A stretch of 62,912 bases of DNA, filler included, from Octopus bimaculoides (GCF_001194135.2; 4 parts of 3 records of this genome joined end to end with filler, not necessarily neighbours in it), one strand, 5' to 3'; counted from the whole stretch's first letter, positions 1 through 20,058 are shown. A program made the numbers and translations. The notes: generated from the sequence alone by a model not told the origin.

Positions 1-409
1 ATATATATATATATATATAAAGTTCTTTATAACTGCATTCAGTTTCATCAAGTGTTGGACACGCATTCATATATGTGTATATATATTTATACATTTGCAT
101 ACATTTGCATACATAGTATATTACAAATAAGAAGATAAGAAAGAGTTGATTACATCTTTCATGACCAGTTACAATCGTCTCTGTACCAACCTTGTTTTCA
201 ACCCCAGTTCATGCAAAAGTTTCATTTGCAATTTTGCAATTAAGAATGTCATTTCTTCAGACCTACATCAAAGTTACGTTCTTACATTGCGTGTCTGCCA
301 ATTATTGAGTTATGTTTGTATCTTAGTATATCTATCCTCGCTTATCATGAGTGTTTGGTTATAAAAAATTTTTTTTAACAAAACCGTAGGGACCCTTATT
401 CCATAAGAC

Positions 410-614
410 AACTAATTCTTTCTACTATAGGCACAAGGCCTGAAATTTTTGTGGGAAGGAATAAGTCGATTGCATCTGGTACTTATTTCATCAACCCCAA
501 AAGGATGAAAGGCAAAGTCGACCTCGGCGGAATTTGAACTCAGATCGTAAGGACAGACGAAATGCCGCTAAGCATTTTGCCCGGCGTGCTAACGATTCTG
601 CCAGCGCGCCACCT
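410..614 (-). mobile_element. tRNA-derived SINE, family A
   Basis: Reverse complement carries GAGTTCAAATTCCGCCGAGGTCGACTTTGCCTTTCATCCTTT, which recurs many times in the window. Confidence 0.85.
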
Positions 615-853
615 TATCAGTCAATTAATGATAGAGACAGGATCTTCGAGAGAAATTTTGCACGGCAGACCAAAACTGTTTCTCCGTCCCAGTGATGGTT
701 GTGATGAGGGTGGACGTCTTTCAAAATTCAAGTGCGCTTGGAAATTTTAGCTGAGAGAAGGGCCTACCGTCAGTTACGCATGGACTCTCTCCATGGCTCT
801 CCGAGCTCTGGGTCCGATATACCCACTATCTCGCCCACTACTTGCATAGGCTT

Positions 854-889
<36 letters not shown>

Positions 890-1146
890 TTAAAGCGAGT
901 AACGTTGTACTTACAGCTGTCGTTGGGGATGATGATGATGATGATGATGATGAAAGTTGTAGTGGTCGTAGGTATGGCGGATAGGAAGTGCGTGGGTGGG
1001 GCTGGGGTTAGAAATTGGAATGGCGCTAATGGCGTTAGCGATCGTAATAGTTGTGGCAGTAGCAGCCAAGTTACGTGATACAAAACCCTCTTCTAACTTT
1101 TAGCAAACAGCATATTTTTGTTTGTTTTTTGGTTTATTTTTAACGC

Positions 1147-1182
<36 letters not shown>

Positions 1183-1675
1183 TTCGGTAAAGACACAGTT
1201 TAAATATATGCGAGTTCATAGAGTCCATTAGTGATGGTGGCATTCAAATATTTAGCTTACGTTCGTGATATTTCTAAAACTTATTCTTAAATTCGACATC
1301 AGGTGTTGTCTTTGGTTCTGCTTCCTGCAACCGAAAGGGTAATCTATAAAAATAGTCGCACTTCCTTTGTGTGCACGTGTGTGTGTCCGTGTCCGTGCGT
1401 GTGTGTGTATACATATATGCAAATGTATATACGTACGTATATATGTATGTGTGTGTGCGTGTATGTGTGTATGTATGTATGTATGTATGTATGCATGCTT
1501 GTTTGTTTGTATGTATGTATATCCGAAAGACCAAATGAAAACATCATGTACTTTAAATAGACGTGTAAAATGATTTAACGACAAATCATGCTCAGTGGGG
1601 CATCCGTTGTTTGACATCCACACATTCCAAATATTTGCCTCGTTCTTATCCAACCCGCATACCTACCAATCTACC

Positions 1676-1913
1676 TTTCTTATTTCTTTATTGTCCACAA
1701 GGGGCTAAACATAGAGGGGACGAACAAGGACAGACAAAGAGATTAAGTCGATTACATCGACCCCAGTGCATAACTTGTACTTAATTTATTGACCCCGAAA
1801 GGATGAAAGGCAAAGTCGACCTCGGCGGAGTTTGAACTCAGAACGTAACGGCAGACGAAATACCGGTAAATCTTTCGCCCGGCGTGCTAACGTTTCTGCC
1901 AGCTCGCCGCCTT
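1676..1913 (-). mobile_element. tRNA-derived SINE, family A (near full length)
   Basis: Same head and core as the 410-614 copy, with a longer 3' part. Confidence 0.88.
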
Positions 1914-2154
1914 CGATTTACCTATCTATTTACCTATCAACCTATCAAACTACACACCTACATTCCTACCTACCCACCTGCCTATACGAACCAACGGGGA
2001 GACCTGCCCCAGCTCGGCAGTTCGACATAGAATGCATTTGTTCACTAAAGTCCACAACAACAACAGCAAGTAAAACCGGAACAACAACAACATCAACAAC
2101 ATCTGCAACAGCAACTAGAGTGTATAGATGAAAACGAATGCCAACGTGTGTGTG

Positions 2155-2340
2155 TGTGTTTTGCCTTTTATCTTTTACTTGTTTCAGTCATAAGACCGCA
2201 GCAAGGCTGGAACATCACCAAGAATTTTAGTCGAACCTCAGTACTTTTTTTAAGCCTAGTATTTATTCTATCGGTCTCTTTTGCCGCACCGCTAAATTAT
2301 GGGAACATAAACACACCAACACCGATTGTAAAGTGGTGTG
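2155..2340 (-). mobile_element. SINE family B, 3' part
   Basis: tcttttacttgtttcagtca... is the reverse complement of the tail at 6600-6650. Confidence 0.75.
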
Positions 2341-2516
2341 GGAGGGGAAACAAACACACACAAACATACATACATACATACATACATACATACATACACA
2401 TAACATACATACACATAACATACATATATACATACATACATACATACATACACATAACATACATACATACATACATACATACATACATACATACATACAT
2501 AAATACATACATACAT

Positions 2517-2650
2517 AGTTCGAATTTACAGAAAACAAAAGACGAAGACAGGTGAAAGAACAACAAGCAGGTGTATTAGTTTGACGCTCAGAAAGAACGG
2601 AAAAGTATTTGACGTTTCGAACCTACGCTCTTCGACAAAAAGGATTGAGA
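2517..2650. repeat. Dispersed repeat, probable Penelope-like element terminus (copy 1)
   Basis: Homologous to 39990-40120 (tttacagaaaacaaaagacgaag...ttagtttgacgctc...acgtttcga.cctacgctcttc). The minus strand has a degenerate minimal hammerhead motif GAAGA...GAAACGTC. Confidence 0.55.
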
Positions 2651-2703
2651 GGGGGGAAAAAGGAATGCGAAGGAACAAAACAGAGAGAGAGAGAGGGAGA
2701 GAG

Positions 2704-2745
<42 letters not shown>

Positions 2746-3737
2746 GTGTAAGGATTAACGGTTCAACATGATGAAATGACCAGAAGAAACGCNNNNNNNN
2801 NNNNNNNNNNNNNNNNNNNNNNNNNNNNNNNNNNNNNNNNNNNNNNNNNNNNNNNNNNNNNNNNNNNNNNNNNNNNNNNNNNNNNNNNNNNNNNNNNNNN
2901 NNNNNNNNNNNNNNNNNNNNNNNNNNNNNNNNNNNNNNNNNNNNNNNNNNNNNNNNNNNNNNNNNNNNNNNNNNNNNNNNNNNNNNNNNNNNNNNNNNNN
3001 NNNNNNNNNNNNNNNNNNNNNNNNNNNNNNNNNNNNNNNNNNNNNNNNNNNNNNNNNNNNNNNNNNNNNNNNNNNNNNNNNNNNNNNNNNNNNNNNNNNN
3101 NNNNNNNNNNNNNNNNNNNNNNNNNNNNNNNNNNNNNNNNNNNNNNNNNNNNNNNNNNNNNNNNNNNNNNNNNNNNNNNNNNNNNNNNNNNNNNNNNNNN
3201 NNNNNNNNNNNNNNNNNNNNNNNNNNNNNNNNNNNNNNNNNNNNNNNNNNNNNNNNNNNNNNNNNNNNNNNNNNNNNNNNNNNNNNNNNNNNNNNNNNNN
3301 NNNNNNNNNNNNNNNNNNNNNNNNNNNNNNNNNNNNNNNNNNNNNNNNNNNNNNNNNNNNNNNNNNNNNNNNNNNNNNNNNNNNNNNNNNNNNNNNNNNN
3401 NNNNNNNNNNNNNNNNNNNNNNNNNNNNNNNNNNNNNNNNNNNNNNNNNNNNNNNNNNNNNNNNNNNNNNNNNNNNNNNNNNNNNNNNNNNNNNNNNNNN
3501 NNNNNNNNNNNNNNAAATTAAGTATCAGTTGCTTACTGAGGTCGATCTAATCGACTGCCCCCATCCCTCCCAAAAAATTTCAGGCCTTGTACCTAGAGTA
3601 GAAAAGAATACATAAAACTTTGATTACATGTATCCATAGTCTTGGAAAACCTTGGCAATAATATAAGCAGAAAGATTTCCAATTTGTGTACTTCTCTTGC
3701 TTTTGGTTTCAGTTTCGCTTTCTTTTCTTTTTTTCAG

Positions 3738-4155
3738 GCGCTTCTTGGCAAATACAATGGATCATGTGGCGTGTGTGGAGACCCGTGGGATCAAAGTCCA
3801 CGGGACCATGAAAGGGGTGGAAAATTTTATGAAGGAATCATAACAGGGACTTTTGAGGAAGGATCAATGATTAAAACTGCAGTACAAGTAACTGCTAATC
3901 ACAAAGGTTATTTTGAATTTCGAGTCTGCCCTTACGATAGCCCTGAAGCTGGTGATATTGAATATTCAAAGGATGGCAATTTTGTTGAAGTTAGTCAATC
4001 GTGTTTGGACAAACATCTGTTAACCCTCGGTGAAACTTCTTACACCAGATATTACATCCCACATACATCACCAATTATGCTTAACAATATCTCTCTCAAA
4101 CTACCAAGTGGTCTGGTCTGCAAAAAATGCTTATTCCAATGGACGTACGTAACCG
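3738..4155 (+). CDS. AA15-family LPMO, internal exon with most of the catalytic domain
   Basis: Acceptor ttttttcAG at 3736-3737 and donor GTAAGT at 4156-4161. Translation ALLGKYNGSCGVCGDPW...HERGGKFYEGIITGTFEEG...VQVTANHKGYFEFRVCP...LKLPSGLVCKKCLFQWTYVT contains the AA15 motifs CGVCGDP, TANHxGxFEF (second His of the His brace) and CxxCxxQWxY. Confidence 0.93.
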
Positions 4156-4405
4156 GTAAGTACAATTCTCTGTTACCATGTATTCAATAAAAGAAAGCAA
4201 TGATATCGATAGATTAAATTAAAATCGTTTCAATTAGTGATCTAAAAAATCATCATAGCTCTATTTTATCATGTTTTTGAAAAAGGTTGTTTTGTTTTGT
4301 TTTACATTGTTGTTTTCTTTAAAGGAAACCATATGATTAAGGCATGTTCTAAAAGTACTTTCAGCGTTAAAGGTTTCGTGGTGGTTGTGTCGTTGTCCCT
4401 TAACC

Positions 4406-4680
4406 CAGGGGTTTTCAAACTGTGGTCCGCGGACCACAGGGGGTCCGTAGACAGCAAATACTTTTTATGGGCAATTTGATTTTATATGTGTTTTTTAAGC
4501 GAGATCTTTTAATTGACAATAAACCTATTTGTTAAATACTGTTAAATAAATAAATGTAAAAATGTATGTTATTTTAAGCAAATATTTATGTATAAATTTC
4601 ATAAGCGTTTATAAGGGGGTCCCTAAGGTAAAGCCTGAAATATAAAGGGGTCCGCAAGTCAAAAAGTTTGAAAACCACTG
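4406..4680. mobile_element. hAT-type MITE in LPMO intron
   Basis: 15-bp TIRs CAGGGGTTTTCAAAC / GTTTGAAAACCACTG with 1 mismatch. Perfect 8-bp TSD CCTTAACC at 4398-4405 and 4681-4688. Confidence 0.92.
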
Positions 4681-4820
4681 CCTTAACCCATTCGAACTTT
4701 GGGATACTACTCATCGCTCTGTTAAGATTACACGAGACTTGAAACACAGACCAGAAAGCTAATGAAACACTTGTCAGTTGTATGTTACTGTTATTGCAAG
4801 TATCAATGATGTAAGTGATG

Positions 4821-5035
4821 TAAAGCAGTGAATTGGCAAATTCGTTAGCACGCAGAGCAAAATGCCCAGCAGCATTTCGTTCGTCTTTACGAACTGAGTT
4901 TAAATTCTGCCGAGGTCGACTTTGCCTTTCATCCATTCATGGTAGATAAAATAAGTACCAGTTGAGTACTGGCATCGATGTAATAGATTAGCCCCTCCTT
5001 CGAAGTTACTGGCTTTGTACTAGAATTTGAAACCA
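4821..5035 (+). mobile_element. SINE family A
   Basis: gaggtcgactttgcctttcatcc core with a tRNA-like head. Confidence 0.8.
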
Positions 5036-5334
5036 AATATATTTTTATGGAGCTAAGATAGCGTTTTGTCCTCGGTTTGTAACTATGGAAGAGATACAAT
5101 ACAAACCATAATGAATCCAGAACGAAATATGAATGGATGCATAGATCTTCGAAGTTCGACCGTGAGTATTCAATTTTACCTAGTCGTCAAATGAACGTGG
5201 TTGAGTATTCGTAGACATGTGCATCTTCAAAGTAATTCTGAAGCAGAATCAGTGTGACACATTGTACAGGTATAATTGATCCGACAGATTTCTATGCAGT
5301 TCCCATCAACCCAATTTTCACTCAGAAGGTGACT

Positions 5335-5625
5335 GAGCACTCCGTCGGTTACGACGAAGAGTGTTCCCAGTTGATCCGATCAACAGAAAAGCCTGCTTGT
5401 GAAATTAACTAACAAGTAGTTGAACACTCCACAGACACGCTTGCCCTTAACGTAGTTCTCAGAGAAATTCAGCGTGACAAGTCTGGCCCATTGAATTACT
5501 GGTACTACTCATATTTACCAGCTGAGTGGACCGGAACAATGTGTCTTTAAAGTGCCTGACACAAGGACACAACCCACTGCCAGGAAGCAAGCTCACGACC
5601 TTATGATCATGAGCCGATTACATAA
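5335..5625 (-). mobile_element. SINE sharing the family C 3' tail but with a different body
   Basis: cactccgtcggttacgacga...cagcgtgacaag matches the tail at 49521 onward, then diverges into a caaggacacaac-containing body. Confidence 0.7.
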
Positions 5626-6019
5626 ACAACGCCAGGCGCATTGACTTTCACAAGGAATTGGTCGAGCCGGAGCTAAAGAAAACGACATTTGCTCAAAACA
5701 CTTGCAGTAAGATTGAACCTGGGACCCCGTGGTTGCAAGAACAAGATAAAAACGCTAAATGCATGACACTGATTTTATTTTTAATAGCTCAGTTTCAGGA
5801 AGAAAGGTAGCGCTAGTAGCTCTCTTCTGGGCCTTGGTAGTTGATGGGGAAAAAAGGAGAAAAATGTTTTCAGAACAGTGACCAAGACCCATTGCTTGCA
5901 AAAGAAGGGGCTCTGTTAAAAAGGGATTCAAGTGTCATTGGTGAAGTTATTGATACCAGTTACTTAGTCAAAACTGAGCCATAACTGTACTTAGTTTCAA
6001 ATTGCTAAGGTGGAAACAC

Positions 6020-6652
6020 AGGAGCAGTCATAGTTCCGTGGTTAAGAAACTCGCTTTGCAACCACGTGGTTCCAAGTTCAATCTTCCTGCGCAGCACCTT
6101 GTTCCTTTTACTATAAACGAACCAGTACCTTTTAAGTGAATTTGGTAGATGGAAACTGTGTGGAATCCCGTCGTATATGTGCATGTGTGTGCGTATCTTT
6201 GACAACTGCCGTCGGTTTGGTTTACGTCCCCGTACATTAGCGGTTCTGCAAAAGAGACAGGCTTAAAAATTAAGTACTGGATTCGATGATTTATTCGGTC
6301 CCACTGCGTGGCACCTTGAGTAAGTGTCTTCTACTATAGACTCGAGCCGACCAAAGCCTTGTGAGTGGATTTGGTAGACGGAAACTGAAAGAAGCTAGTC
6401 GTATATACGTATATATATATATATGTATGTGATGTGTGTGTGTACGTTTATGTGTCTGTGTTTGTCCCCCTAGCATCGCTTGACAACCGATGCTGGTGTG
6501 TTTATGTCCCCGTCACTTAGCGGTTCGGCAAGAAGAGACCGATAGAATAAGTACTAGGCTTACAAAGAATAAGTCCCGGGGTTGATTTGCTCGACTAAAG
6601 GCGGTGCTCCAGCATGGCCACAGTCAAATTACTGAAACAAGTAAAAGAGTAA
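6020..6652 (+). mobile_element. Two adjacent SINE family B copies
   Basis: cactgcgtggcaccttg.g.aagtgtcttctactatag...gtggatttggtagacggaaactgaaagaag core, internal TA/TG microsatellite, and tail ending gactgaaacaagtaaaaga-like. Confidence 0.85.
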
Positions 6653-7214
6653 GGCTGTACCTTTATGTCTAGACGGACCTGAAGCAGACTTAGAGTAAAG
6701 AGGGCATGTCATTAATAAGATCGTAAATGACGGCGAAAAAACTTGGACAAACCTGATTGATCGATTGCTCAAAAGATTAATCAAACAATCGATTAGTAAA
6801 TTGGTTAAATGGTCTACCAATTAATAAATAAATAATAAAGAAGTAAAAAAGAACTAGTGCATGAGTTTTTGTGGCTGTTTTGCCCTAGGTCAACGCTGAT
6901 TGGGCAGATGCATGCCTAAAGATGTCTTCAAGCCGTGATCAACCCGTCATTTAAGCAATGTAAGATTAGATTATCTTGTGTCCTTTCGTTATTTAAAACC
7001 CAGCCGAGAGTGATTTGAAGGTGATTTAGTCAATACATCCAGCAGGTCATTACAAAGAAATACAGACGTCTGTGGAGAAGGAGATTGTTCTTTTTTTTAC
7101 TTTTTTGTCTTTTTGTAAAATAGACCTTCGACGTGGTTTCTGATATTTCCTATTTATGCTTTCATGAAAATTAAAAAAATATTTACACTATGTCCTATTT
7201 TAATTTCAATCCAG

Positions 7215-7442
7215 GTAATAGCTGGGGTAAGTTTCCAAACGGAACGGCTTGCATTGGATGTGGGCTACAAGAAACATTTAAAGCTTGCTCTGATATTGTC
7301 ATCAACCCCAAATCGACCGGTAGCTCAACGTCTACACCACCTATAACCACATATTCTACCACAAAGTCGCCATCTACCGAACAGAGCACAGTACTACTCA
7401 GCAATTCGCCGACAACTGAGGGAACAAAATGGAGAGCAACAG
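7215..7442 (+). CDS. AA15 LPMO exon: end of catalytic domain plus start of Ser/Thr linker
   Basis: Acceptor tccAG at 7213-7214, donor GTTGGT at 7443. Phase 1 matches the previous exon (G+GT = Gly). Encodes GNSWGKFPNGTACIGCGLQETFKACSDIVI, the AA15 C-terminal motif, then STGSSTSTPPITT...KWRAT. Confidence 0.93.
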
Positions 7443-7510
7443 GTTGGTTTTTAATGTAAAACATTACATGTTTACATACATACATAGATGCATGCATTCA
7501 TACATACATA

Positions 7511-7541
<31 letters not shown>

Positions 7542-7924
7542 CGCTCACACACATATGTGTATGTTTGGACAAATGGATGTATATTCTTTTATTCTTTTAC
7601 TTGTTTCAGTCATTTGACTGCGGCCATGCTGGAGCACCGCCTTTAGTCGAGCAAATCGACCCAGGACTTATTCTTTGTAAGCCTAGTACTTATTCTATCN
7701 NNNNNNNNNNNNNNNNNNNNNNNNNNNNNNNNNNNNNNNNNNNNNNNNNNNNNNNNNNNNNNNNNNNNNNNNNNNNNNNNNNNNNNNNNNNNNNNNNNNN
7801 NNNNNNNNNNNNNNNNNNNNNNNNNNNNNNNNNNNNNNNNNNNNNNNNNNNNNNNNNNNNNNNNNNNNNNNNNNNNNNNNNNNNNNNNNNNNNNNNNNNN
7901 NNNNNNNNNNNNNNNNNNNNNNNN

Positions 7925-7964
<40 letters not shown>

Positions 7965-10935
7965 CATATATGCTCACTCACAGTCACGTGAAACACATAC
8001 ATGCACACCCACACACACACGCCTCTATGTGCACATATATATGCAACCATACACATGTACACATATACATATCCGCACACATAAACAAACTGAATAACGT
8101 ACGTTGCTTTCTGGAGAAAATTAAACTCGCATAACGAGTTGAAATTTGAACAAACTACGGGCAGACTAAGCACGCATATAAGTGGCTGTGAGAATGTGTA
8201 CAAACGTTTCGTTAACGTCCATGTGCACATTTCATATAGCTTGCAAATTTTCATATTTTATATTAAAAATAAAATTTCTCATTTGTGATTTTTTTTTTCT
8301 TTTAAACCATAACCATGAATCAACAGAATCAAGACAAAGGGGGAAAAGTACGCTCATGTACGCACGCACGAGCACATATATATGTATTTGCTATAGATTG
8401 ATAAACAGTTAAAACATCCTTTCATGCTATGTGGAGTTTAGCTGTATCTTAGAACGGTTTACCTCTTATTTATATGTATTTCAGTCACTTATGTGACGAA
8501 CAATTTGTTTAACGAACAGGGTTCCGAAATGGATATGTTCGTAAATACAAACCCCACTGTAATAAGTTACAAAAATAATTAGAGCAGAAAGAGACTAATA
8601 TTAATTTGAACCTGACTGCATTAAAGTGTTGGATGTTGGTGATGATGGCAAAGACGATGCCAATGGCAACAATTTCCAATGAAGCTAATACCACATAATC
8701 GTAAGCAGTTACAAATCGTGACAAATTTTCTATCAATGTGTTAAGTATATTGACACTCATTACCGTGGCAATATTGACAAAAGCAAAGACATTAGAAATA
8801 TTGAAGTAAAGCACACATTAACTTGCTTAATACATAATCATGGTAACTCTAAATAATCAAGACTACCACAAAGAGGTTAACATTTTTTGTTCAAGTTACA
8901 AAAAGGAAATACACACAAAATTTTAAAATATATATTTTTGAACTGACTTAATGTACCAAAGTGTAAATTAAATATAAATCAGGAATCAGTAAGGATAGTG
9001 AGAAAAAAGGCTAGTTTGGATCTTAGCTGGGAAAATAAAAGAAACTCTTTAGGAGACAGGATGCAGTTATATGCTTCTGTAATATTTGTTCTTAATGAGA
9101 GCACTTCGTTATCCCATCAAGTATTGACAAGTCGTAAATGTCACTACACAGTATTCATGGTCTCTGGGTCTTCCTGAATGGCACACCTTGAATTATTTTA
9201 GCAGTTATGATGATGCATGTTTTATGCGGCCCACTTCTCGGAAAAAGTTGCCCTTGCTGGTCTACAGCTCGCTCACCAGTTCCTTTTGTGTCCTTATCTT
9301 TTCCTTTGACCACTTCTTGTCCAGTGTGGTATCTGGCTAGAGTTTCTTACTATTTGAGTTTTTGAAACGTAAACACAGTTGGCTTCAATGTTATTAGCTC
9401 AACTAACTGCATTTTTGCTTGGGGTTCTTGCTTTTGTAACTATCCAGAAGGATAGACATATCATTGAGAACAATAGATTTAGTTGGTGATCTTGTTATCT
9501 TAATTCTAGCTTTTGGTGAAATAGAAGAGGTTAGAAAGGGTCAAGTGGTGAAGACATTGTTTAGGCCTAGCTAAAGGCATCTGGCATATGTAAAACTGCT
9601 GTCAGAGAAAAACCATTGTTCCACCATGGGAAAAGTTCTGNNNNNNNNNNATATATATATATATATATATATATAACCTCTGTGTGTGTGTGTTTAACCC
9701 TAAAAAGCTCTATGCATTAACTAAATTATCTAATGTTGAAGAACTGATTTTCTTAATTTAACAAGCAACAATTTCAATTCATTCAGACTATACACCTATC
9801 AAAATGAAGAACACATTGTTGAACAGAGATCCATAAAACCAAAAATATTAGCATTACATGAAGGCATGTTGCTTACTGGTTAGGGTATTAAACTCATAAT
9901 TATGATTGTGGGTCCAGTACCCCAGCCAGTAACATTGTGAATTTGATTCTTGAACTGGGTGGGAAATTGCATCCTTGAGTAAGACACTTCATTTCACATG
10001 GCTTCAGACTACTCTATTAAAATGCATACCTGTTGGTTACTCGTGCAGATGTATTTCTTTCCAGCTCTCACATTCAGGATGTTCCAATAAATCAAGAGTG
10101 AGAGGGCTGAGAGTGCATATGTGTTTGTTTGTGACTACATAAGCACTTAAAACAATTAGAAAAGGCGTGGTACATGCCACCAATCATACTCACTTGCTAA
10201 TGATGACTGTGTTTTATTGGCATTACAGAAATGGAACACCAGTCATGACAGAAACTTTTATTTGAACTTTACCTTGGTTAGGTGGATGCTTCTGCTGATT
10301 AATAAATTCTATAGCTGACTATATGATTCTTGCCCACAAAAATGTTATCAGCATCATTCCTACTAAATGCTATTTATTTGAAAAACATCTCTGGATTATA
10401 TATTCTCCAAACAATACAATTTTCCTATGCCTATGTATGATCTTCAGTATTTATTTAGTGATTCATTGATCACTCATTTTGCACATATAGTGAAGGCTGT
10501 GTTTTGCTGAGAAGACTACAATAAGACTAGAACATGACTAGAAATGCCTTTGCTAGTACATATCATAAAATTCACTTATATATTTTTATATTTTTTACCT
10601 TTTCCTAAATGTGTCAGTAGATAATTATTTCTTTGAATATTTCCAACTATCTTTGATCAATTTTAATTTATCATCCCATATCTTTCTTTGATCGCTTCTA
10701 CACTAAATACCATTTATTATATTATTAATCTATTACTGCTATCTTAGTGTATCATATTAATCTTTCTTTCCCTTTCATATTGTTTCTCATTTTCCTGTGT
10801 GATTAATATTTCCAATTATCTACAACTCATCTAGAAATATCTACATCATGCCAAATACAAAAAAAAACTTACCTATCTATCTCTTACATTCTATATTTTT
10901 TTAAAATTTTATTTTTAAATCTTTGTGCCCATCAG

Positions 10936-11312
10936 ATGTATCCCTGACAACACTAGGCAAATGGACTCGAATTCTGACAAGCAGCCTTGGTACGACTACC
11001 AGTCTAGAAGCAGATGAGCCTACAAAAGCTGAAACTGATAGCTGGTACAGCTCTAAGTTTAGTGCAACAGCAGAGACAGCAACAACAACAACAACAGCAG
11101 CAACAACAACGACAACAGCAACAACAACAACGACAACAGCAACAACAACAACAACAACACAAGCACCAAGTAAAACCACAATTAAAACACAGCAATGTAA
11201 GGCTGTTGGTGTCTGGAAAATAGTTAAAGGAATAAGTCAGTGGTGTATTGATAACTGTCGCCGGGGATTTTGTCCTGCGGGTTACTGTTCACCTGAATGT
11301 AGATATGTTTAA
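10936..11312 (+). CDS. AA15 LPMO last coding exon: Thr-rich linker plus six-Cys module
   Basis: Acceptor atcAG at 10934-10935, phase 1 compatible with the donor at 7443. Encodes a poly-Thr tract then CKAVGVWKIVKGISQWCIDNCRRGFCPAGYCSPECRYV, stop TAA at 11310-11312. The three exons total 1023 nt, an exact 341 codons. Confidence 0.85.
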
Positions 11313-13630
11313 TAATTTGGAGTTTTTTTCACTGGTTATTTAATTGTAATTATTCATGAATGTCTTTTAAAAAGATTTTATTCACTCATATAAATGAGTA
11401 AAAATTGATTTGCTTATAATGATTTGAACCTATGATGCTTTCAATATTATTAGAAAGCTGCAATTATTAACGCTAAATCAGCTTTATGGACTCTTCAGAA
11501 TATTTTTTTTTTTTATTTACTTCAAAAAATTGTTTCCATTCAACAACAACAAAAAATTATATTTTGTCTTACAGAATTTGAAGCATATGTTTCAAAAATA
11601 CAATTTTCAAATTTTTCTTTGGTGTGGAAAAGGGAAGAATAACTTAATTTAAATATTAAGTTGTTCTGCTGCTTGTTGCAATGAAATTGGTTTCCATATC
11701 TTCCCTGCCAAATTGATAGTTATCAACCTGTTTTTCTATTATGGACTCAGTTGTTGTATTGATGATGATTTTTATAAGTATTAACAATCACAAACTCATT
11801 TCAAACAGTTGTATATGACTGAACTGATTGTAAAAGGAATGTGATCATTATTGACATCATTATGACAAGATGACCCCCAAGACAGAGAAATCAATTGGAA
11901 TCAGAAATGATGTATGAGAAAAATGCTCCTACTTAAGTTAAAAATTGCTGTTTGATATCATTCATGTTGAGATGCAAGCAGTTGTTGTACTTTATCTTTT
12001 CTTACAATTTCACATTCATTGATTTCTCAATCATTGGAGCTTATGGGTGCTAAATATGCTACCCAGTTGCTTTCTCTTCTTTTGTAAAGGTATCTATTTT
12101 CTGTTATGTTAGCTTAAATTATATCGCAAAAATATATAATGCCTGCATCAGGCTATAAATATTTGACTGACTACTTAGAAGTGAACCTCTTAGCTATATA
12201 ATTTCTTAAGATCTTAACAGAAATAAAGAAGAGAAAAATTCCATGTTTTTTCATGTGATAAATAACTTGCAAAAGTAACCTCTCTTATTTCATATTGTAT
12301 AAATATATTCTGTTTACAAAAGATACCAATAAGTCTCTACAACTGAAAAATATTTCAGATGCTATGAAATAAGTCCTATAATTTTGGGGTTCAGAGTTTA
12401 AAATTTTTGATTAATGTTGAGTCCAGGATAGAACTTTATATGGCTTATAACAACGTTAAATTCAAAACTATTGGTAACATGTTAGCAAGTTAAATGTTAA
12501 TACATTAATTACAACTTGTGATGAATATATGTATATATTGGCAAAAGAGGAACCATGATTCTGTAGACAAAAAAATATGTGTAAATGCATGATAATTTAT
12601 TCTTACCAGTATAAATGGTTTATTAATAATTGCTCTGTAGGTTTCCCAATTAACATTATTGCAAACTAATTGGTAATTTTGAGTGACAGTTTAAAAACGT
12701 GAATACTTAATAAATTTTGTATCAGACCATGCAAAATTTATGAAGATTTGAATTTTGAGAACATTTTAAAACATAACCAAAAGGGATGCAGTCACAGAAA
12801 GCTGAATTTTTTAGTCAAAGGGTTCAATAGGTTGGAAGATGTAAACTAGCACTTAAGTTCACTGATTCAATTTACCCAGTTGTAAATAGGTTCCATGAGT
12901 TGGTGCAACTTACTGTTGTTGGAACTATCATTAACTGAGTTGTACCATACTCAAGTCATCCAGTTAGACAGGAGTAATGGGAAAAAAAGACAATACTCCA
13001 TGTTTTTCTCTGTAAATAATCCTGTAAAACTGAAGAGGATCTCCAAGAAGTCAAAATCTTACACAGCAGCTTCAACTCAGTACAAAAGCAATTATGATGA
13101 AAGAAGGATAAAAATGTTATTTTATTCTTCAAGTATGTCTCCATGGAGCCTATATAATCTTTTCTGTACCAACATATATTATAACATAATAATGTTTGAT
13201 TTAAAATATTCAATAATCACATTTTATTTTGTAAAGGACATGCATACTCAAGTATTACATGTCTACACTTGATATATTTCTATGCATATAAAAACTAGTC
13301 TTGCGGGGGTAGGGGTGGAGGGCATAAAAGAAATTGCGAGATTGGTCAATGTGTAGTGTGGAGTGTTAAGATTTGTTTTGTTTTTGTTTGTGTTTCATGT
13401 TTATGTTTATGTTTGTTGCTTCTTTATTTGTGTTTTGGAGGGGTTTTTTTTCTGGCCCTCTTATGTATGTATGAGTAAAATATATGCATTTAACTTAAAC
13501 AGCTTGCATTCAGTATTATTCAAAAATGAATACAATAGAAAGTTATACTTTCTTTCACAAACACATGCATGCATACACATATGCACATTTGTGCATTATA
13601 AATTTTGCCAGTTCCTATGTGCATACATAC

Positions 13631-13682
<52 letters not shown>

Positions 13683-14099
13683 ACACACACATAAATACAT
13701 ATGTGTGTGTGTGTGCGTGTGTGGTGCCTGTGTGTGTGGGGGGTGCATGTGTGTGTGTGTGTCTCTGTGTGTGCACGTGTGCATGTGTATATACGTCTAT
13801 ATATGATTCTATGTATTGTCACTGTTTTGTAATAGACTTTTGTAAATATAAACATCAACTGTTAAGTTTCCTAGACTGGAAAACACTCCAGACAAATTAA
13901 TTTCATATATTCTATTAAGGATCAACAGAAATTCTTTCCTGCAGTTTAACAAAATACTACATCTGTTCAAAAATACAATTGCTAATAGCAATCTTCTTAA
14001 ATGGTTATAAATGTTTTGAGCGAGGAACCGGGAGTCAATTTAAAATATTAATATCTTTTATAGTGATGATGATTATGATGATGATAGTAATAATAAAAG

Positions 14100-15005
14100 T
14101 GATTGTCTAATATAGGCACAAGGCTTGAAGTCTGGGGGGAGAAAGTTAGTTGATTACATTGAAACCAGTGCTCAAAGGACATTTATTGCTCATCAGAAAA
14201 TAAATTGCAAAGTTGACCTTAGTAGAATTTGAACTCAGAACATAAAGTTGAGCAGAGTATGACTAAGTACCACATGCTAATTATTCTGTCAGCTCACTAC
14301 CTTAATAATAATAATCTTTTCTACTAAAGGCACAAGGCCTGGAACATTTTAGTCAACTTTGCCTTTCATTCTTTGAGGGTCGATAAGATAAATACCAGTT
14401 GAGTACAGGATCTATGTAATTGAGTAGTCCTCACCCAAAATTGCTGGCCTTGTGCCAAAATTTGAAACCATCATCATCATTATTATTATTGTTATTATTA
14501 TTATTATTATTATTAATGAGATGGCATGGTAACAGAATCAACAGCATGCTGGACAAAATGCTTAGCGGTATTTTTGTCCATCTTTATATTCTGAGTTCAA
14601 ATTCCACCAAGGTGGACTTTGCTTTTCATCCTTCCAGGGTCAATAAATTAAGTACCACTCAAGCATTGGGAGCGATGTAATCAACTCATCACTTCCTCCA
14701 AAATTTCAGGCCTTATACCTATAGTAGAAACAATTATTATAATCATCGTTATCATCATCATCATTATTATATTATTATTATTATCATTAAGGCAGTGAGC
14801 TGGCAGAATTGTTAGCACGCTGGACAAAATGCTTAGCAGTATTTCGCCCATCACTACGTTCTGAGTTCAAATTCTGCCAAAGTCGACTTTGCCTTTCATC
14901 CTTTCGAGTTCAATAAATTAAGTACCAGTTATGTACTGAGGTCAATGTAATCGACTTATCCACTCCCCCAAAATTGTTACCCTTGTGGCAAAATTTGAAA
15001 CGATT
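14100..15005. mobile_element. Cluster of about four SINE family A copies in mixed orientation, separated by (ATT)n/(ATC)n
   Basis: Repeated ctgagttcaaatt...actttgcctttcatcc motifs near 14220 (-), 14355, 14600 (+) and 14870 (+). Confidence 0.8.
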
Positions 15006-15010
15006 ATTAT

Positions 15011-15046
<36 letters not shown>

Positions 15047-15899
15047 AGCTACAGCTATTATATTATGTATAATGTCACAAGGTGTCTGCTTTATTTTTAA
15101 TTTCTCTAATTTCATAAATCCCAATAACACTAGATAGGAAAATTATCTTCCTTGCTTACACATCACCAACTCAACATTTGTAAATGAGTCATTGTATGTT
15201 GTAGGATTTTTTTTCTGTTGTTTCCATCATTTTTTTCCTCCTCCCCCCACCAAAAAAAAAATTGTTTTTTTTTTTCCACACAGATCTTTATATATGTAAA
15301 TGTATAACGACACCCCATCTTTCACTTTCAAATTCATCCTAGTACAAAAACAAAAAAACCTGAAAAAATATATTTTTCTGATTAAAAAAACTGAGTGTAA
15401 ATAATGATTAATATGAAATAAAGATTTATATATATATATATATATACATATTTTAAAATCAAGTATGTGTTTGGTTGTTTTTATTCCAGTCACTTTGTCT
15501 TTCATCCTTTGAGAGTTGATAATGTAATGTATCAGTCAGATATTGGGGTCAATGGTAGCAACTAACCCCATCATCTCAAAAATACTGGCCTTGTGCCTAA
15601 ATAATAATTATTATTGTTCATTGCCTTGCTGAGTATGTTTTAGAGTAATTATATAGTTTTACTATAGTGATTTTAGTACTTTTAGTATAGTAATCTTATT
15701 GTTTTATTTTGTTAAGCTGACCATGACTGCAAGGGACTAGTTGACCACCTTTTGTTATTTGCTCCACAAGGCATAATTTAAAAAAAAAAGATAAGAAAAA
15801 TTTTCAAATCAAACCCAAAAGTTTCAAAATGGTTACCATGCTTTCATCTTTGCCAGCTAACCATCAATAGAAGATTCTACGGGAATAAGGTTAATGGTC

Positions 15900-18700
15900 C
15901 TTCTCTTTGTGTTCGTATTATTTAACATGGCCTTTTGGATGTGCGTAGCTTGGGATTGGGAGCAGGCAATGTGAATGCGCGTAGCTTGGGATCGCTTTCA
16001 AAGAAATGCCACGTGGTCAATGGCCTCAGGTTACCAGATATAGATGTGGTGACCATAAGCGAGAACTGAATTTCCGAGATACGAACCCTCACGTTCATCT
16101 TCGACGGCTAAGTAATTGTATGTATCGCCCAGACAACTGGGCTCGAGAGGTGAAATTGCAGTGTTATTTCGCGATACCGACTATATACCTGAGCCCAGAA
16201 GGTAAATCGATTTAATTGGACATGATCAGCAGCGAAGGCCATACGTTCGGACAATTCGTTGCCTACGCTCATGCAGGAGCAGAGCAACCAAATTTCTTCT
16301 CGAGTGTAAAGGTCTTACAAGGAACGCATAGCTCTTTTGTGCTAGTGTGTGATTGAAGCACCATCTTGGATGCAAGATGGGACTGTGTGGAGTTAACTGT
16401 TAGGAAAATGGCGCGCAAAAGTCTCACAAACCAGCTTAGACATTTTCAACTGCTTGACAGATGAAACCAACTGCATTTCCACAAGGCGTGGGTTGTCCAC
16501 AGTTTTAAGACACCGGTTACAAAGCCACAAATTTATGTTTGTACGGTCGGTCTCAATAGACTTCATAAACAGAGCTAGGTTGCTGGAAGCTGAACGCATT
16601 TTGTCCGCAAAGCTTACACAGACCAGAATTAACGAATTAGTTATTCACGTGAGTAATCGCGAAAGGCATCACGATCAACGTGCTTACGACAAGATTGGCC
16701 TCCGTTTAATTTATTAATATGAAGTACGAAGGCTGCCTTGTCAGAGCTTAGGCAATACTCTAAGACATGAAGGAATGAAAGCCGTTGAATGGGTCAGAGT
16801 GGTGGAGACACAACATAGCAACAACGTAACAATTCAGCCTTTAGCAGATCGTGATCAGCGCGCGACACTCGATCTTGAGCAGATATATCTGACTTTGCAC
16901 GGCTATTCGGGACTAGTAGCGGGCTAGATAGCAAGACCGATTCCAGTGACTACCTCGATGACCTGAGCGACTCTCAACATCGGTGGTGGAGTGATATGAA
17001 AAACCGATAACAGCCGCAGAGATACAGAAAGTGATGACTATTTGCACAAGAGTCATATCGCTTGGTTTAGGCCATCTACCCCACGCGCTTTACGCATATG
17101 CTAGACTTGTTTGGCAGCTTATGGGCAGATATCTACTGTAAATGGTATTTCCTTTTCTGTCAGGAGTTGTAGTACTGCTGAGAAAGGACTCGAACAAAGA
17201 GAGCCACATTGATAACTTATGGCTCATAACTCTGCTAAACGCAGAGTTCAAGATTATGGCCATGGTGTTAGTGAAGGTTGGTGCGTATTGTCGTTTTTCA
17301 TATCTGTGATGTACAGACATGCACCATCTCAAATAGTTCTGTTCATGACAACCTACACTTTATGCAGTACACCATAGAAAAGATGGGTAAGGAACCTGGT
17401 ATGGGTGGGGTCCTGATAAACTCAGATTAATCGAAAGCTTTCGATATGGTTAGCTAACAGCAGTCGGTTTCGGTCCCAGTCTCAAGGACTGAATCACCGC
17501 TATGTACAGCAACATCTGTTCGGTAGTCAGAGTAAATGACCACCAAACGGAACTATTCATTGTAGTTCATGAGCTCAGTTTGTGATAGTTGTTCCCTCTT
17601 GTCTTTTCTATGTGTACTGACTTCAGAATCATAACGTGGGAACAAGAGACTTTGAGAACCATAGCACGAGAACTAGAATGCCAAAATATGTCTCGGTATA
17701 TATGGTCGATGTCATCGTAGAGCCACACACCGAAAACACCGAGATGATCAGCACTGCTCTAAGGAAATACGAGGCAGTAACAGGAGCCCAAACCAACCAA
17801 GAAAAGTCGCTGGTCCTGCAGGTGGGAACCTGGAAAGGAAGATCCATGCCGTCCAACAGTCGTGGGGCTCTGGTCGAATGTACAGGTTTAATTGCTCGCG
17901 GTCGAGAGGACGATATCCCTGAGGGGTCAGACAGAAGTGGCCAACGTCTACATGTTTGGTAGTGCCATCAGCCATGCTAGCCCGAGATGCATGCAAAGCG
18001 ACGGAAACGTCCTACACGCAGTGGTACACTACTCGTGCATTTGCTGATTTGTGAAATTATGTTGAACTGCTTCTATCACATGTTCCGTGTAGGACAGATC
18101 CATGTAAAACAGATCCGACCATCAACCAACTCCATCGAAAACTGCCTTCCTTTGGGGTAAAAGGGCAAGCAGTTCTCCTCTGTTCAGTGGCTATAACGAA
18201 ATATATTATGTGATGGACGAGGCTGAAATCACTGAAGAAAGTCACATCGCCTTCATTTCACCGGGAAGGACGCAGTTTTTTTTGGGGTTTTTTTTTGTCT
18301 GGTGGCTTTAGCAAAAGAGGTTCTGTGGTGAGCCAAGCCAAAAAGGCTGAAGACAAATACCTTCTAATTTGGCCAAGCCTTCGTTAACGTTGAAAAGGAA
18401 ATTGAGGCTTCACTGTGAAATGCTAGCTTCCTGCATACTTGTTGCAAATGGATGAGATTGGCGAGTATGAACCGAATGAATTGGCCTACTCTATGCGCCT
18501 GTGCATGAAGCGTAACTATGGTTTGTGGGGTTTCCACGAGTAACCCTCGGAACCTTGGAAATCTACTTCTTTCGAGAAATTATTCATTGTTAGAATTGTT
18601 TTTGCTACTTTTCTGTTTACACGCCCTTGTAAATAATTCCACATTGTATCATTTAGTACCGCCCCTGATCTCTTTGCAAACACTTTGTGGTTAATAAAGA
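15900..18700 (+). mobile_element. Decayed L1/Tx1-clade LINE ORF2 (APE endonuclease plus RT)
   Basis: Frameshifted pieces: GNVNARSL...DIDVVTISE (APE N-terminus, about 15965-16070), LITLLNAEFKIMAMVL (about 17220), DNLHFMQYTIEK...GGVLINSD*SKAFD (about 17345-17450), VSVYMVDVIV...YEAVTGAQTNQEKS..QVGTW (17690-17835). AATAAA near 18693. Confidence 0.88.
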
Positions 18701-18840
18701 AATAATTATTGTTACTATTCTTATTCTAATTCTTCTTCTTCTTCTTATTATTATTATTATTATTGTTCAGTAGTTTTATTTTTATAACGTGCTTTCACTT
18801 CACTACCGAGCGCAGCTCTGTGCGCCTTGGGTATGTGCTG

Positions 18841-19933: not shown

Positions 19934-19966
<33 letters not shown>

Positions 19967-20020: not shown

Positions 20021-20058
<38 letters not shown>

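What the first reader, a model, noticed from the sequence alone, without database searches (positions are those of the whole stretch)
3738..11312. Modular copper-dependent LPMO (AA15) in a probable cephalopod genome
Seen: three exons with canonical splice sites and matching phases encode an AA15-like catalytic domain, a long Ser/Thr linker and a Cys-rich tail. Established: AA15 LPMOs oxidatively cleave chitin or cellulose and were characterised mainly in arthropods. The TANH alanine and the Phe of QETF match the arrangement in chitin-active AA10 and AA15 enzymes. Inference: this is a secreted chitin-remodelling oxidase, plausibly for beak, radula, sucker cuticle or digestion of crustacean prey. 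All long ORFs here are partly intronic, so an unspliced annotation would miss it.
Basis: partly seen in the sequence, partly recalled or inferred. Interest (0 to 1): 0.75.

Follow-up and report, generated by a model that had tools for sequence, protein, structure and literature searches.

The report
Octopus AA15 chitin-oxidising enzyme gene
This is the last three of four coding exons of an octopus gene for a copper enzyme (AA15 LPMO) that most likely cuts chitin oxidatively; the family was already known in octopuses, so the gene is an ordinary, uncharacterised member, though it evolves unusually fast.

Summary
The three exons exist exactly as described (3738-4155, 7215-7442, 10936-11312, + strand). 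They have AG/GT borders and fitting phases, and give a 340-codon frame ending in TAA. The product matches the Thermobia AA15 crystal structure (E 1e-29). It is the syntenic orthologue of Octopus sinensis LOC115219724 (protein 77% identical, DNA about 88-94%, same splice sites).

All three assembly gaps lie in introns and hide no coding sequence.

The gene is cut at its 5' end. The first coding exon (signal peptide, catalytic His1, 63 codons in O. sinensis) is not in the piece. By synteny it lies about 1.4 kb (rough estimate) upstream of base 1.

The residues that can be checked are present: Ala53, His55, Trp143, axial Phe161 and 9 of the 10 family cysteines.

The Cys-rich tail is one copy of the 6-Cys module of insect moulting enzymes LPMO15-1 (profile hits at 47-56 bits). 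The module is absent from Pfam and occurs on many AA15s and some GH18 chitinases.

AA15s in molluscs and octopods are already in the literature, so this is a new member of a known kind.

Extra: dN/dS against O. sinensis is about 1.1-1.4, yet frame, splice sites and all cysteines are kept.

The parts
1..3737 (+). 3' part of intron 1, including assembly gap 2793-3514 and SINE-like repeats. Coding exon 1 is not here.
   Evidence: Collinear with O. sinensis intron 1 (window 476-2006 = L001 12029-13922; 3515-4230 = 14322-15035). No match to the exon 1 peptide.
3738..4155 (+). Coding exon 2 of 4 (418 nt, starts in phase 0). It encodes AA15 core residues ALLGKYNGSCGVCGD...QWTYVT.
   Evidence: AG/GT borders and open frame. 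tblastn with P0001 gives E 2e-78. Same borders as O. sinensis exon 14542-14959.
3894..3902 (+). Codons Ala53-Asn54-His55 (TANH). His55 is the second histidine of the copper 'histidine brace' (His91 of TdAA15A) and Ala53 corresponds to Ala89.
   Evidence: Alignment to 5msz, coordinates. His is invariant in the homologue alignments. Residue roles are from PMC5823890.
3948..3983 (+). A 12-residue loop insertion (AGDIEYSKDGNF). It is shared only with O. sinensis and two unnamed Logan transcripts.
   Evidence: Alignment A2, and a gap at this point in the 5msz alignment.
4156..7214 (+). Intron 2 (3059 nt).
   Evidence: GT...AG borders. 89-95% identical to O. sinensis intron 2.
7215..7442 (+). Coding exon 3 (228 nt). 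It encodes the end of the catalytic domain (to 7303) and the start of the Ser/Thr linker.
   Evidence: tblastn E 3e-36. Same borders as O. sinensis 18009-18248.
7223..7225 (+). Trp143 (GNSWG), the surface aromatic residue equivalent to Tyr166 of TdAA15A and Trp168/169 of insect LPMO15-1 (substrate binding).
   Evidence: Counted on the 5msz alignment, coordinates. Role as listed in PMC12955341 and PMC5823890.
7268..7279 (+). Gln158-Glu-Thr-Phe161. Phe161 is the axial, non-coordinating residue (Tyr184 of TdAA15A).
   Evidence: Gln, Glu and Phe are invariant in alignments A2 and A6.
7443..10935 (+). Intron 3 (3493 nt as assembled), holding assembly gaps 7700-7924 and 9641-9650.
   Evidence: Both flanks of each gap are collinear with O. 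sinensis intron 3. The protein alignment is continuous across the junction.
10936..11312 (+). Coding exon 4 (377 nt including TAA at 11310-11312). It encodes the rest of the linker and the Cys-rich tail.
   Evidence: tblastn E 4e-39. Same acceptor as O. sinensis 22267.
10941..11072 (+). A conserved island inside the 'linker' (aa 218-261, SLTTLGKW...KFSATA). Against O. sinensis it has 0 non-synonymous and 2 synonymous differences.
   Evidence: Per-codon comparison. AlphaFold puts beta strands here at modest confidence, pLDDT 52-68.
11076..11159 (+). Thr/Ala codon repeat (ACA/ACG/GCA). It is 14 codons longer than in O. sinensis and is a mucin-like, probably O-glycosylated spacer.
   Evidence: 68 of the 133 linker residues are Ser or Thr. 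pLDDT is below 50.
11196..11300 (+). The 6-Cys module (aa 303-337), spacing C-X15-C-X3-C-X4-C-X4-C-X3-C. It is one copy of the module found twice in insect LPMO15-1.
   Evidence: A profile of the module finds 646 representative proteins. It hits both repeats of Tc, Lm and Of LPMO15-1 at 47-56 bits. AlphaFold pLDDT 86.7, two helices.

Best explanation
The window holds coding exons 2-4 of a four-exon octopus gene, the syntenic orthologue of Octopus sinensis LOC115219724. The gene encodes a modular family-AA15 lytic polysaccharide monooxygenase.

Shown here:
- the gene structure and the orthology;
- the AA15 fold and sequence;
- the second copper-binding histidine (His55), Ala53, the axial Phe161, the surface Trp143, and 9 of the 10 family cysteines;
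- a roughly 130-residue linker that is half Ser/Thr and mostly predicted disordered;
- a C-terminal 35-residue six-cysteine module homologous to the two repeats of insect LPMO15-1.

Inferred from the orthologue: a signal peptide is removed so that His1 becomes the N-terminus. His1 and His55 then hold one copper ion.

Inferred from characterised relatives (TdAA15B, OfLPMO15-1, chitin-active AA10s):
- The reduced copper centre uses O2 or H2O2 to oxidise C1 of glycosidic bonds in crystalline chitin. This opens the fibre to chitinases.
- The glycosylated linker acts as a spacer.
- The six-cysteine module anchors the enzyme to its substrate. The module also follows the linker of GH18 chitinases.

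Whether the chitin attacked is the animal's own (beak, radula, sucker and gut cuticle) or that of crustacean prey is not resolved.
For: Gene structure and orthology:
- Exon structure and frame.
- Same exons and borders in O. sinensis.
- Synteny at 88-94% DNA identity.

Family:
- PDB sequence hit to 5msz at 1e-29 and Foldseek hit to 5msz at 1.3e-12.
- LPMO_10 on the orthologue at 1.1e-15, residues 28-230.
- Invariant His, Gln-Glu-x-Phe and cysteines in the alignments.
- Residue roles and the link between axial Phe and chitin: PMC5823890, PMC12955341.

Tail module:
- The tail profile hits both repeats of the three studied insect LPMO15-1 proteins (E 2e-13 to 1e-10 at Z = 1e6).
- It hits 45 of 117 further AA15s, including Limulus, mantis shrimp, lobster and millipede.
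- Among 142 module-bearing proteins, 24 carry LPMO_10 and 2 carry GH18. BLAST finds an AA15 domain in about 45.
- P0033 is GH18 + Thr linker + 3 modules.

The gene is under selection for function. Against O. sinensis the frame has no stops and only in-frame indels, and all 15 cysteines are kept. Neutral simulation gives 0.023 and 0.024 for the first and last of these, and introns carry 7.1 gap openings per kb.

Insect LPMO15-1 knock-down blocks cuticle chitin turnover (PMC9156745).
Against: - His1 and the signal peptide are not in the window, so an intact 5' end in this species is unproven.
- Pfam gives no hit on the fragment itself.
- No expression data, copper binding or activity could be tested.
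- No cephalopod or mollusc AA15 has been characterised.
- In shipworms the endogenous AA15s are barely expressed in digestive tissue (PMC8561940, PMC6767633).
- dN/dS of about 1.1-1.4 overall and 1.5-2.2 in the catalytic part is unusual for a housekeeping enzyme.
- The function of the six-cysteine module has never been tested, and the AlphaFold model of it has no PDB match.
Confidence: 0.8

Rival explanations
1. Same enzyme, but its job is predatory or digestive. It would be secreted in saliva or the gut to breach or digest crustacean exoskeleton chitin, rather than to remodel the octopus's own chitin.
For: - The coding sequence diverges at least as fast as the introns (9.5% against 7.4%).
- dN/dS is 1.1-2.2, a pattern more usual for proteins at an interface with other organisms than for developmental enzymes. 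This reading is inference.
- Thermobia uses AA15s in digestion (PMC5823890).
Against: - The tail module is the hallmark of the insect group that works on the animal's own cuticle (PMC9156745).
- Shipworm AA15s are not digestive.
- No tissue data are available here.
- dN/dS is not significantly above 1 (Fisher p 0.4-0.8).
Confidence: 0.3
2. A non-catalytic LPMO-like protein: a mucin-like chitin- or copper-binding component of a mucus or cuticle layer that has lost oxidase activity.
For: - Sources name relatives 'integumentary mucin C.1-like', 'mucin-5AC-like' or 'zonadhesin'.
- The Ser/Thr linker is long.
- Amino-acid constraint on the catalytic domain looks relaxed.
- Histidine-brace proteins without LPMO activity exist (Bim1/X325; PMC10952591).
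Against: - Every active-site residue that can be checked is conserved: His55, Ala53, Gln158, Glu159, Phe161, Trp143, and His1 in the orthologue.
- The source names are automatic labels driven by the Thr-rich linker.
Confidence: 0.1
3. The copy in this species is decaying (a young pseudogene), which would explain dN/dS of about 1.
For: dN/dS is about 1.1-1.4. Exon 1 cannot be inspected.
Against: Over 340 codons there is no stop (P 0.023 if neutral) and no frameshift, although introns show 7.1 gap openings per kb. All 15 cysteines are kept (P 0.024), all four splice sites within the window are intact, and a 44-codon stretch has no amino-acid change.
Confidence: 0.05
4. The enzyme acts on cellulose or another polysaccharide rather than chitin.
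For: TdAA15A cleaves both cellulose and chitin, and some AA15s carry cellulose-binding CBM1 (PMC5823890).
Against: - An axial Phe together with the AA10-like Ala is the arrangement of the chitin-specific TdAA15B and of LPMO15-1.
- The module also sits on GH18 chitinases.
- Octopuses are carnivores (general knowledge).
Confidence: 0.05

Closest known systems
Octopus sinensis LOC115219724 (P0001, 394 aa, 'uncharacterized protein', RefSeq model)
   Same: Syntenic orthologue with identical exon borders, domain order, all cysteines and all active-site residues. Protein identity is 77% overall and 83% in the catalytic core.
   Different: - It is a different species: DNA identity is about 90%.
- There are 74 non-synonymous against 20 synonymous differences.
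- The Thr repeat is 14 codons longer here and 'NTEQ' is missing.
- The O. sinensis model is complete with exon 1, whereas the window is cut.
- Neither gene has been studied experimentally, as far as the searched literature shows.
Insect group I LPMO15-1 (TcLPMO15-1, LmLPMO15-1, OfLPMO15-1; PMC9156745)
   Same: Same architecture: signal peptide, AA15 domain, and a C-terminal six-cysteine motif. The active site has the same TANH and E-T-F arrangement. The tail module is homologous. These are the only AA15s with this module whose function is known: cuticle chitin turnover at the moult, according to the paper.
   Different: - One module copy here instead of two.
- Spacing is C-X4-C and a final C-X3-C, instead of C-X6-9-C and C-X1-C.
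- The Ser/Thr linker is about 130 residues, where insects have a short non-mucin spacer.
- Core identity is only about 41%.
- In an NJ tree the octopus clade lies outside the arthropod groups, so it is not an orthologue of the insect group.
Thermobia domestica TdAA15A (PDB 5msz) and TdAA15B (PMC5823890)
   Same: Best sequence and fold match. The His brace partner, Ala89 and the disulfide cysteines are conserved. TdAA15B shares the axial Phe and is chitin-specific.
   Different: - The Thermobia enzymes are a catalytic domain only, and are digestive.
- TdAA15A has an axial Tyr and also cleaves cellulose.
- The octopus clade has a 12-residue loop insertion, and its mature N-terminus begins His-Ala rather than His-Gly.
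Chitin-active bacterial AA10s (e.g. CBP21 / SmAA10A)
   Same: Same Pfam family (LPMO_10). An axial Phe with the Ala close to the copper site, as stated in PMC5823890.
   Different: Only distant sequence similarity (20-30% according to PMC5823890). They are bacterial and carry different appended modules.

Membership tests
CAZy AA15 LPMO | Significant sequence and fold similarity to a characterised AA15 catalytic domain | tested here: met
   phmmer against PDB finds only 5msz, E 1e-29, covering query 5-169. Foldseek on the AlphaFold model: 5msz at E 1.3e-12, next hits above 1e-3.
CAZy AA15 LPMO | Signal peptide cleaved to leave histidine as residue 1 (first half of the histidine brace) | tested here: inconclusive
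   The exon that would encode it is not in the window. The O. sinensis orthologue has MSRTK...VVYYVEG followed by HARLLRPPSR, and LPMO_10 starts at that His.
CAZy AA15 LPMO | Second copper-binding histidine (His91 of TdAA15A) | tested here: met
   His55 (3900-3902) aligns with His91. It is invariant in alignments A2 and A6.
CAZy AA15 LPMO | Axial Tyr/Phe and the nearby Ala (Tyr184 and Ala89 of TdAA15A) | tested here: met
   Phe161 and Ala53 align with them. Phe is invariant among the metazoan homologues aligned.
CAZy AA15 LPMO | Ten conserved cysteines of animal AA15s (PMC5823890) | tested here: met
   Nine lie in the window's catalytic part: C10, 13, 64, 89, 128, 131, 152, 155, 164. The tenth is the CGG cysteine of exon 1, seen in the orthologue.
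CAZy AA15 LPMO | Match to the family HMM (Pfam LPMO_10; dbCAN AA15 was not available) | tested here: inconclusive
   The window fragment gives no hit even at E 1. The full-length orthologue and two relatives score 50-59 bits against a 23-bit cut-off. The failure is attributable to the missing N-terminal 37 residues.
CAZy AA15 LPMO | Copper binding and oxidative cleavage of chitin or cellulose | not testable with these tools
   Needs recombinant protein, EPR and a MALDI assay.
Insect group I LPMO15-1 (PMC9156745) | C-terminal six-cysteine motif | tested here: met
   An HMM of 50 modules, including the window's, hits both repeats of Tc, Lm and Of LPMO15-1 at 55.5, 54.7 and 46.7 bits.
Insect group I LPMO15-1 (PMC9156745) | Two tandem repeats with spacing C-X15-C-X3-C-X6-9-C-X4-C-X1-C | tested here: not met
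   The window has a single copy with spacing 15-3-4-4-3.
Insect group I LPMO15-1 (PMC9156745) | Phylogenetic placement within the group | tested here: not met
   In an NJ tree on 156 columns, the window, O. sinensis and two Logan transcripts form their own clade (87.5% bootstrap) outside the arthropod sequences. Identity to Tc, Lm and Of is about 41%. The method is simple, so deep nodes are not reliable.
CBM14 (peritrophin-A chitin-binding domain) as the identity of the tail | Match to Pfam CBM_14 | tested here: not met
   No Pfam family at E up to 1 on the whole product, and only a meaningless E 0.43 hit on the tail alone. Qu et al. also state that the repeats are unrelated to CBM14.

The most novel reading that the evidence does not exclude
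Two linked ideas.

(a) The 35-residue six-cysteine tail is an uncatalogued carbohydrate (chitin)-binding module family.
- It is absent from Pfam and has no match among solved structures.
- It is present in at least 646 protein clusters, in up to 21 tandem copies.
- It is attached mainly to AA15 LPMOs and sometimes to GH18 chitinases, across molluscs, brachiopods and arthropods.

(b) The octopus AA15 carrying it is under diversifying selection, because it works at an interface with other organisms (prey exoskeleton or chitinous parasites) rather than in housekeeping cuticle turnover.
Probability: 0.3. Interest if true: 0.55.

Novelty: new member of a known kind. Interest (0 to 1): 0.3.

Why it matters
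No cephalopod or mollusc AA15 has been characterised. Cephalopods build several chitin-based hard parts (beak, radula, sucker linings, gladius or stylets) and also eat chitin-armoured prey, so a chitin-oxidising enzyme bears on both biomaterial formation and feeding.

The family's presence in octopods is already recorded (PMC10952591), and the O. sinensis orthologue is in RefSeq. The gene itself therefore adds little.

Two by-products are the more useful leads:
- The tail is the same untested six-cysteine module as in insect moulting LPMOs. It is widespread, and also occurs on chitinases.
- The octopus gene changes its amino acids at or above the neutral rate while staying intact.

Tried and rejected
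- Pfam on the 340-aa window product gave no family at E up to 1. This is explained by the missing N-terminus, because the orthologue hits LPMO_10.
- A search for exon 1 in the window, by regex for HG..P..R in six frames and by tblastn with word size 2, found nothing. Synteny places it upstream of base 1. The idea that it hides in gap 2793-3514 is rejected: in O. sinensis that interval is plain intron, about 400 bp long.
- The first homologue search with the whole product returned only 13 proteins, probably because Thr-rich words filled the candidate list. A search with the 40-residue tail alignment found no candidates, because the queries were too short for the word index. The exhaustive profile search and a catalytic-domain profile were used instead.
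- Foldseek on the tail model found no PDB match at E up to 10. For 40 residues this is weak evidence of novelty.
- tRNA scan and Rfam found nothing in 1-18840.
- A reverse-transcriptase-like stretch seen by eye at about 16000-18100 was not confirmed: Pfam on three stitched frames gave no hit.
- Other genes: the ORFs of at least 90 aa elsewhere in the window look repeat-derived or low-complexity by eye. The O. sinensis record has no other called gene in the syntenic 32.6 kb.
- The pseudogene reading was considered and rejected on frame, cysteine and splice-site retention.
- Identity of the tail with CBM14 was rejected.

Full report

Yes. The three intervals 3738-4155, 7215-7442 and 10936-11312 on the + strand each follow an AG. 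The first two are followed by GT(A/T)GGT-type donors. Their lengths (418, 228 and 377 nt) add up to 1023 nt. Joined, they read as 340 codons plus TAA, while the other two frames are full of stops.

The structure does not rest on reading alone. The Octopus sinensis protein P0001 (LOC115219724, 394 aa) aligns by tblastn to exactly these three blocks, with E 2e-78, 3e-36 and 4e-39. I reconstructed the O. sinensis gene on its own chromosome. The only GT-AG combination that reproduces P0001 is 10001-10189, 14542-14959, 18009-18248 and 22267-22604 in locus L001. Its acceptor and donor sequences are nearly letter-for-letter those of the window.

**2. The assembly gaps**

The window is collinear with the O. 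sinensis locus, in the same orientation, at about 88-94% nucleotide identity from about base 476 to 18576.

- Gaps 7700-7924 and 9641-9650 lie in intron 3. The flanks match in order: 7496-7699 = L001 18690-18884, 8078-9406 = 19743-21074, and 10385-14079 = 21722-25365.
- Gap 2793-3514 lies in intron 1: 1921-2006 = 13837-13922, and 3515-4230 = 14322-15035.
- O. sinensis has no exon in any of these intervals. The protein alignment is unbroken across the exon 3/4 junction (...KWRAT|D[V/A]SLTT...).

No reading frame crosses a gap, and no coding sequence is hidden in one.

**3.

The PDB alignment starts at residue 40 of the mature Thermobia enzyme.

In O. sinensis a first coding exon of 189 nt encodes MSRTKNMSPYTLLHLLLVLVVVYYVEG followed by HARLLRPPSRASLWRFGYNVRNNNYNDNEGYCGGRE. 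That is the signal peptide, the catalytic His1, a surface Tyr and the first family cysteine.

Nothing like it is in the readable window. By synteny it sits upstream of base 1: window 476 = L001 12029, and the exon is at L001 10001-10189. If spacing is conserved, that is about 1.4 kb upstream. The window therefore carries coding exons 2-4 of 4, and about 83% of the catalytic domain.

This also explains why Pfam finds nothing in the fragment. The full-length orthologue and two relatives match LPMO_10 over the whole profile at 50-59 bits, against a cut-off of 23.

**4. What it is**

The only solved structure with sequence similarity is the AA15 LPMO of Thermobia domestica (5msz, E 1e-29). An AlphaFold model of the 340-aa product has a confident beta-sandwich core (residues 34-170, pLDDT about 70-90). 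Its best Foldseek hit is again 5msz (E 1.3e-12), and AA9 and AA10 LPMOs appear among the weak hits (E 3e-3 to 1.4e-2).

Counting along the alignment gives these correspondences with TdAA15A:

| Window residue | Window coordinates | TdAA15A residue |
|---|---|---|
| Ala53 | 3894-3896 | Ala89 |
| His55 | 3900-3902 | His91 |
| Trp143 | 7223-7225 | Tyr166 |
| Phe161 | 7277-7279 | Tyr184 |

Sabbadin et al. (PMC5823890) give His1 and His91 as the copper ligands, Ala89 as AA10-like, and the axial residue as Tyr in cellulose-type isoforms. [quoted passage not shown] PMC12955341 lists H1, A/S89, H91 and F186/187, plus Y24 and W168/169, as the key residues of insect LPMO15-1.

Nine of the ten conserved animal AA15 cysteines are in the window, and the tenth is in the orthologue's exon 1. 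His55, Gln158, Glu159, Phe161 and the cysteines are invariant across the aligned metazoan homologues.

**5. Linker and tail**

Residues 170-302 are 51% Ser/Thr and mostly predicted disordered. They include a Thr/Ala codon repeat (11076-11159) that is 14 codons longer than in O. sinensis.

The last 38 residues carry six cysteines spaced C-X15-C-X3-C-X4-C-X4-C-X3-C. Pfam has no model for this.

*Spread of the module.* A profile of 12 such modules, searched exhaustively against 1.84 billion representative proteins, found 646 proteins at E <= 0.001. They are often tandem, with up to 21 copies in one 1459-aa protein.

*What it is attached to.*
- Of 142 hits scanned, 24 carry LPMO_10, 2 carry GH18, and single ones carry trypsin or Ig domains.
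- BLAST detects an AA15 domain in about 45 of them.
- One hit (P0033) is a GH18 C-terminus, then Thr linkers, then three modules. That is the position CBM14 usually occupies in animal chitinases (the CBM14 comparison is general knowledge).
- Named carriers are 'uncharacterized' or 'chitin-binding type-4 domain' proteins of Mya, Littorina, Patella, Haliotis, Sinanodonta, Mercenaria and Lingula.
- In a second set, 45 of 117 AA15s carry it, including Limulus, a mantis shrimp, a spiny lobster and a millipede.

*Link to insects.* Qu et al. [quoted passage not shown] RNAi of these genes blocks thinning of the old cuticle at the moult. I took the Tc, Lm and Of LPMO15-1 sequences from that paper's supplement and scored them with an HMM of 50 modules. 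Both repeats of all three are hit: 55.5, 54.7 and 46.7 bits, E 2e-13 to 1e-10 for a nominal database of one million sequences. The octopus tail is therefore one copy of that same module.

*Structure.* AlphaFold models the module confidently (pLDDT 86.7) as two short helices. Foldseek finds no PDB match. For a 40-residue query that is only weak evidence of a new fold.

**6. Relationship to the known groups**

A simple NJ tree on 156 catalytic-domain columns groups the window with O. sinensis (100%). These two join two unnamed Logan transcript assemblies (P0002 and P0003, 58-61% identical) in a clade with 87.5% bootstrap. The clade lies outside the arthropod sequences, including LPMO15-1 (about 41% identity).

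This clade shares a 12-residue loop insertion (3948-3983) and a mature N-terminus of His-Ala instead of His-Gly.

The gene is thus a clear AA15. It shares the architecture of insect LPMO15-1 but is not a member of that insect group.

**7. How it most likely works**

*Shown:* the gene structure, the AA15 core with its checkable active-site residues, a largely disordered Ser/Thr linker, and the LPMO15-1-type module.

*Inferred from the orthologue:* secretion, with His1 as the N-terminus.

*Inferred from characterised relatives:*
- A single copper held by His1 and His55 is reduced. It uses O2 or H2O2 to oxidise C1 of glycosidic bonds on the surface of crystalline chitin, which creates chain ends for chitinases.
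- The glycosylated linker acts as a spacer.
- The module holds the enzyme on its substrate. Its co-occurrence with AA15 and GH18 supports this, but nobody has tested it.

I put about 0.95 on 'AA15 LPMO gene, orthologue of LOC115219724'. I put about 0.6-0.7 on 'chitin-active oxidase'. The site of action, own cuticles or prey, stays open.

**8. An unexpected feature: fast evolution**

Against O. sinensis the 326 aligned codons show 73.5 non-synonymous and 19.5 synonymous differences.

| Region | dN/dS |
|---|---|
| Whole coding sequence | 1.14 (NG86) to 1.39 (YN00) |
| Catalytic part | 1.5-2.2 |
| Tail | 1.2-2.7 |
| Linker | 0.64-0.81 |

- Coding divergence (9.5%) is not lower than intron divergence (7.4%).
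- The excess over 1 is not significant (Fisher p 0.4-0.8). The values are nevertheless much higher than I would expect for a housekeeping enzyme (general knowledge).
- The gene is not decaying. There is no stop (2.3% of neutral simulations). All 15 cysteines are kept (2.4%). The only indels are three in-frame ones in the linker, although introns show 7.1 gap openings per kb. All splice sites are intact.
- Inside the 'linker', a 44-codon island (10941-11072) has no amino-acid change and only two silent ones. AlphaFold puts low-confidence beta strands there.

The pattern fits a mix of strict constraint on a few positions and diversifying or relaxed evolution elsewhere. With two species, it cannot be resolved further.

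**9. Novelty**

Sabbadin et al. already list molluscs among AA15 holders. A 2023 review names 'cephalopods' and 'octopodes' explicitly (PMC10952591). The O. sinensis orthologue is a RefSeq model carrying the LPMO_10 domain.

The literature searches found no study of a cephalopod LPMO. The role of mollusc AA15s is called undetermined (PMC6767633).

This is therefore a new, uncharacterised member of a known kind. Interest is modest. The module and the evolutionary rate are the parts worth following.

**10. Surroundings**

- No tRNA or Rfam family is present.
- The other ORFs of at least 90 aa look repeat-derived or low-complexity by eye.
- O. sinensis has no other called gene in the syntenic 32.6 kb.
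- The window carries at least seven copies of a ~170-nt SINE-like repeat and a second repeat family.
- A 1.5-kb stretch (16026-17539) is absent from O. sinensis.
- A retroelement-like translation seen by eye near 16000-18100 was not confirmed by Pfam.
- The only AATAAA within 1.3 kb of the stop is at 12222. The 3' end of the transcript is unknown.

Noticed in passing
window 3738-4155, 7215-7442, 10936-11312 against L001 14542-22604: Amino-acid change is at or above the neutral rate between the two octopus species. dN/dS is 1.14-1.39 overall and 1.5-2.2 in the catalytic part. Coding divergence is 9.5% against 7.4% in introns. Even so, the frame, splice sites and all 15 cysteines are kept. The excess over 1 is not significant.
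   Followed up: partly
window 10941-11072: A 44-codon island inside the Ser/Thr 'linker' (SLTTLGKWTRILTSSLGTTTSLEADEPTKAETDSWYSSKFSATA) has no amino-acid change and only 2 silent changes against O. sinensis. AlphaFold gives low-confidence beta strands here. The island is absent from the shorter linkers of P0002 and P0003.
   Followed up: partly
window 11196-11300; proteins P0014-P0161: The six-cysteine module is a large family with no Pfam model. It has 646 representative proteins, up to 21 tandem copies, and occurs on AA15s, on GH18 chitinases (e.g. P0033), and once each with trypsin and Ig domains. It is predicted to form two helices and has no PDB fold match.
   Followed up: partly
They have no AA15 domain and the family is unknown.
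   Followed up: no
window 3948-3983 and O. sinensis exon 1: The octopus-type AA15 clade has a 12-residue loop insertion (AGDIEYSKDGNF). In the full-length relatives the mature N-terminus is His-Ala, not the usual His-Gly.
   Followed up: partly
window 476-616, 1744-1913, 4821-5043, 14181-14267, 14352-14512, 14572-14740, 14788-15010: At least seven copies, in both orientations, of a ~170-nt SINE-like interspersed repeat. It also has many copies in the O. sinensis locus, and three copies lie in tandem at 14.35-15.0 kb.
   Followed up: partly
window 2159-2414, 6294-6652, 7582-7699: A second interspersed repeat family, with 5-6 copies in the O. sinensis locus. One copy abuts gap 7700-7924, which is also flanked by (CA)n/(TG)n microsatellites. 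This probably explains why the assembly broke there.
   Followed up: no
window 16026-17539 and about 16000-18100: A 1.5-kb stretch has no counterpart in O. sinensis (an insertion here or a deletion there). Translations in this area looked reverse-transcriptase-like by eye, but Pfam found nothing in three stitched + frames.
   Followed up: partly
window 11076-11159: The Thr/Ala codon repeat (ACA/ACG/GCA) is 14 codons longer than in O. sinensis. A 4-codon 'NTEQ' unit present in O. sinensis is missing at 7350-7360. The linker length changes by in-frame slippage.
   Followed up: yes
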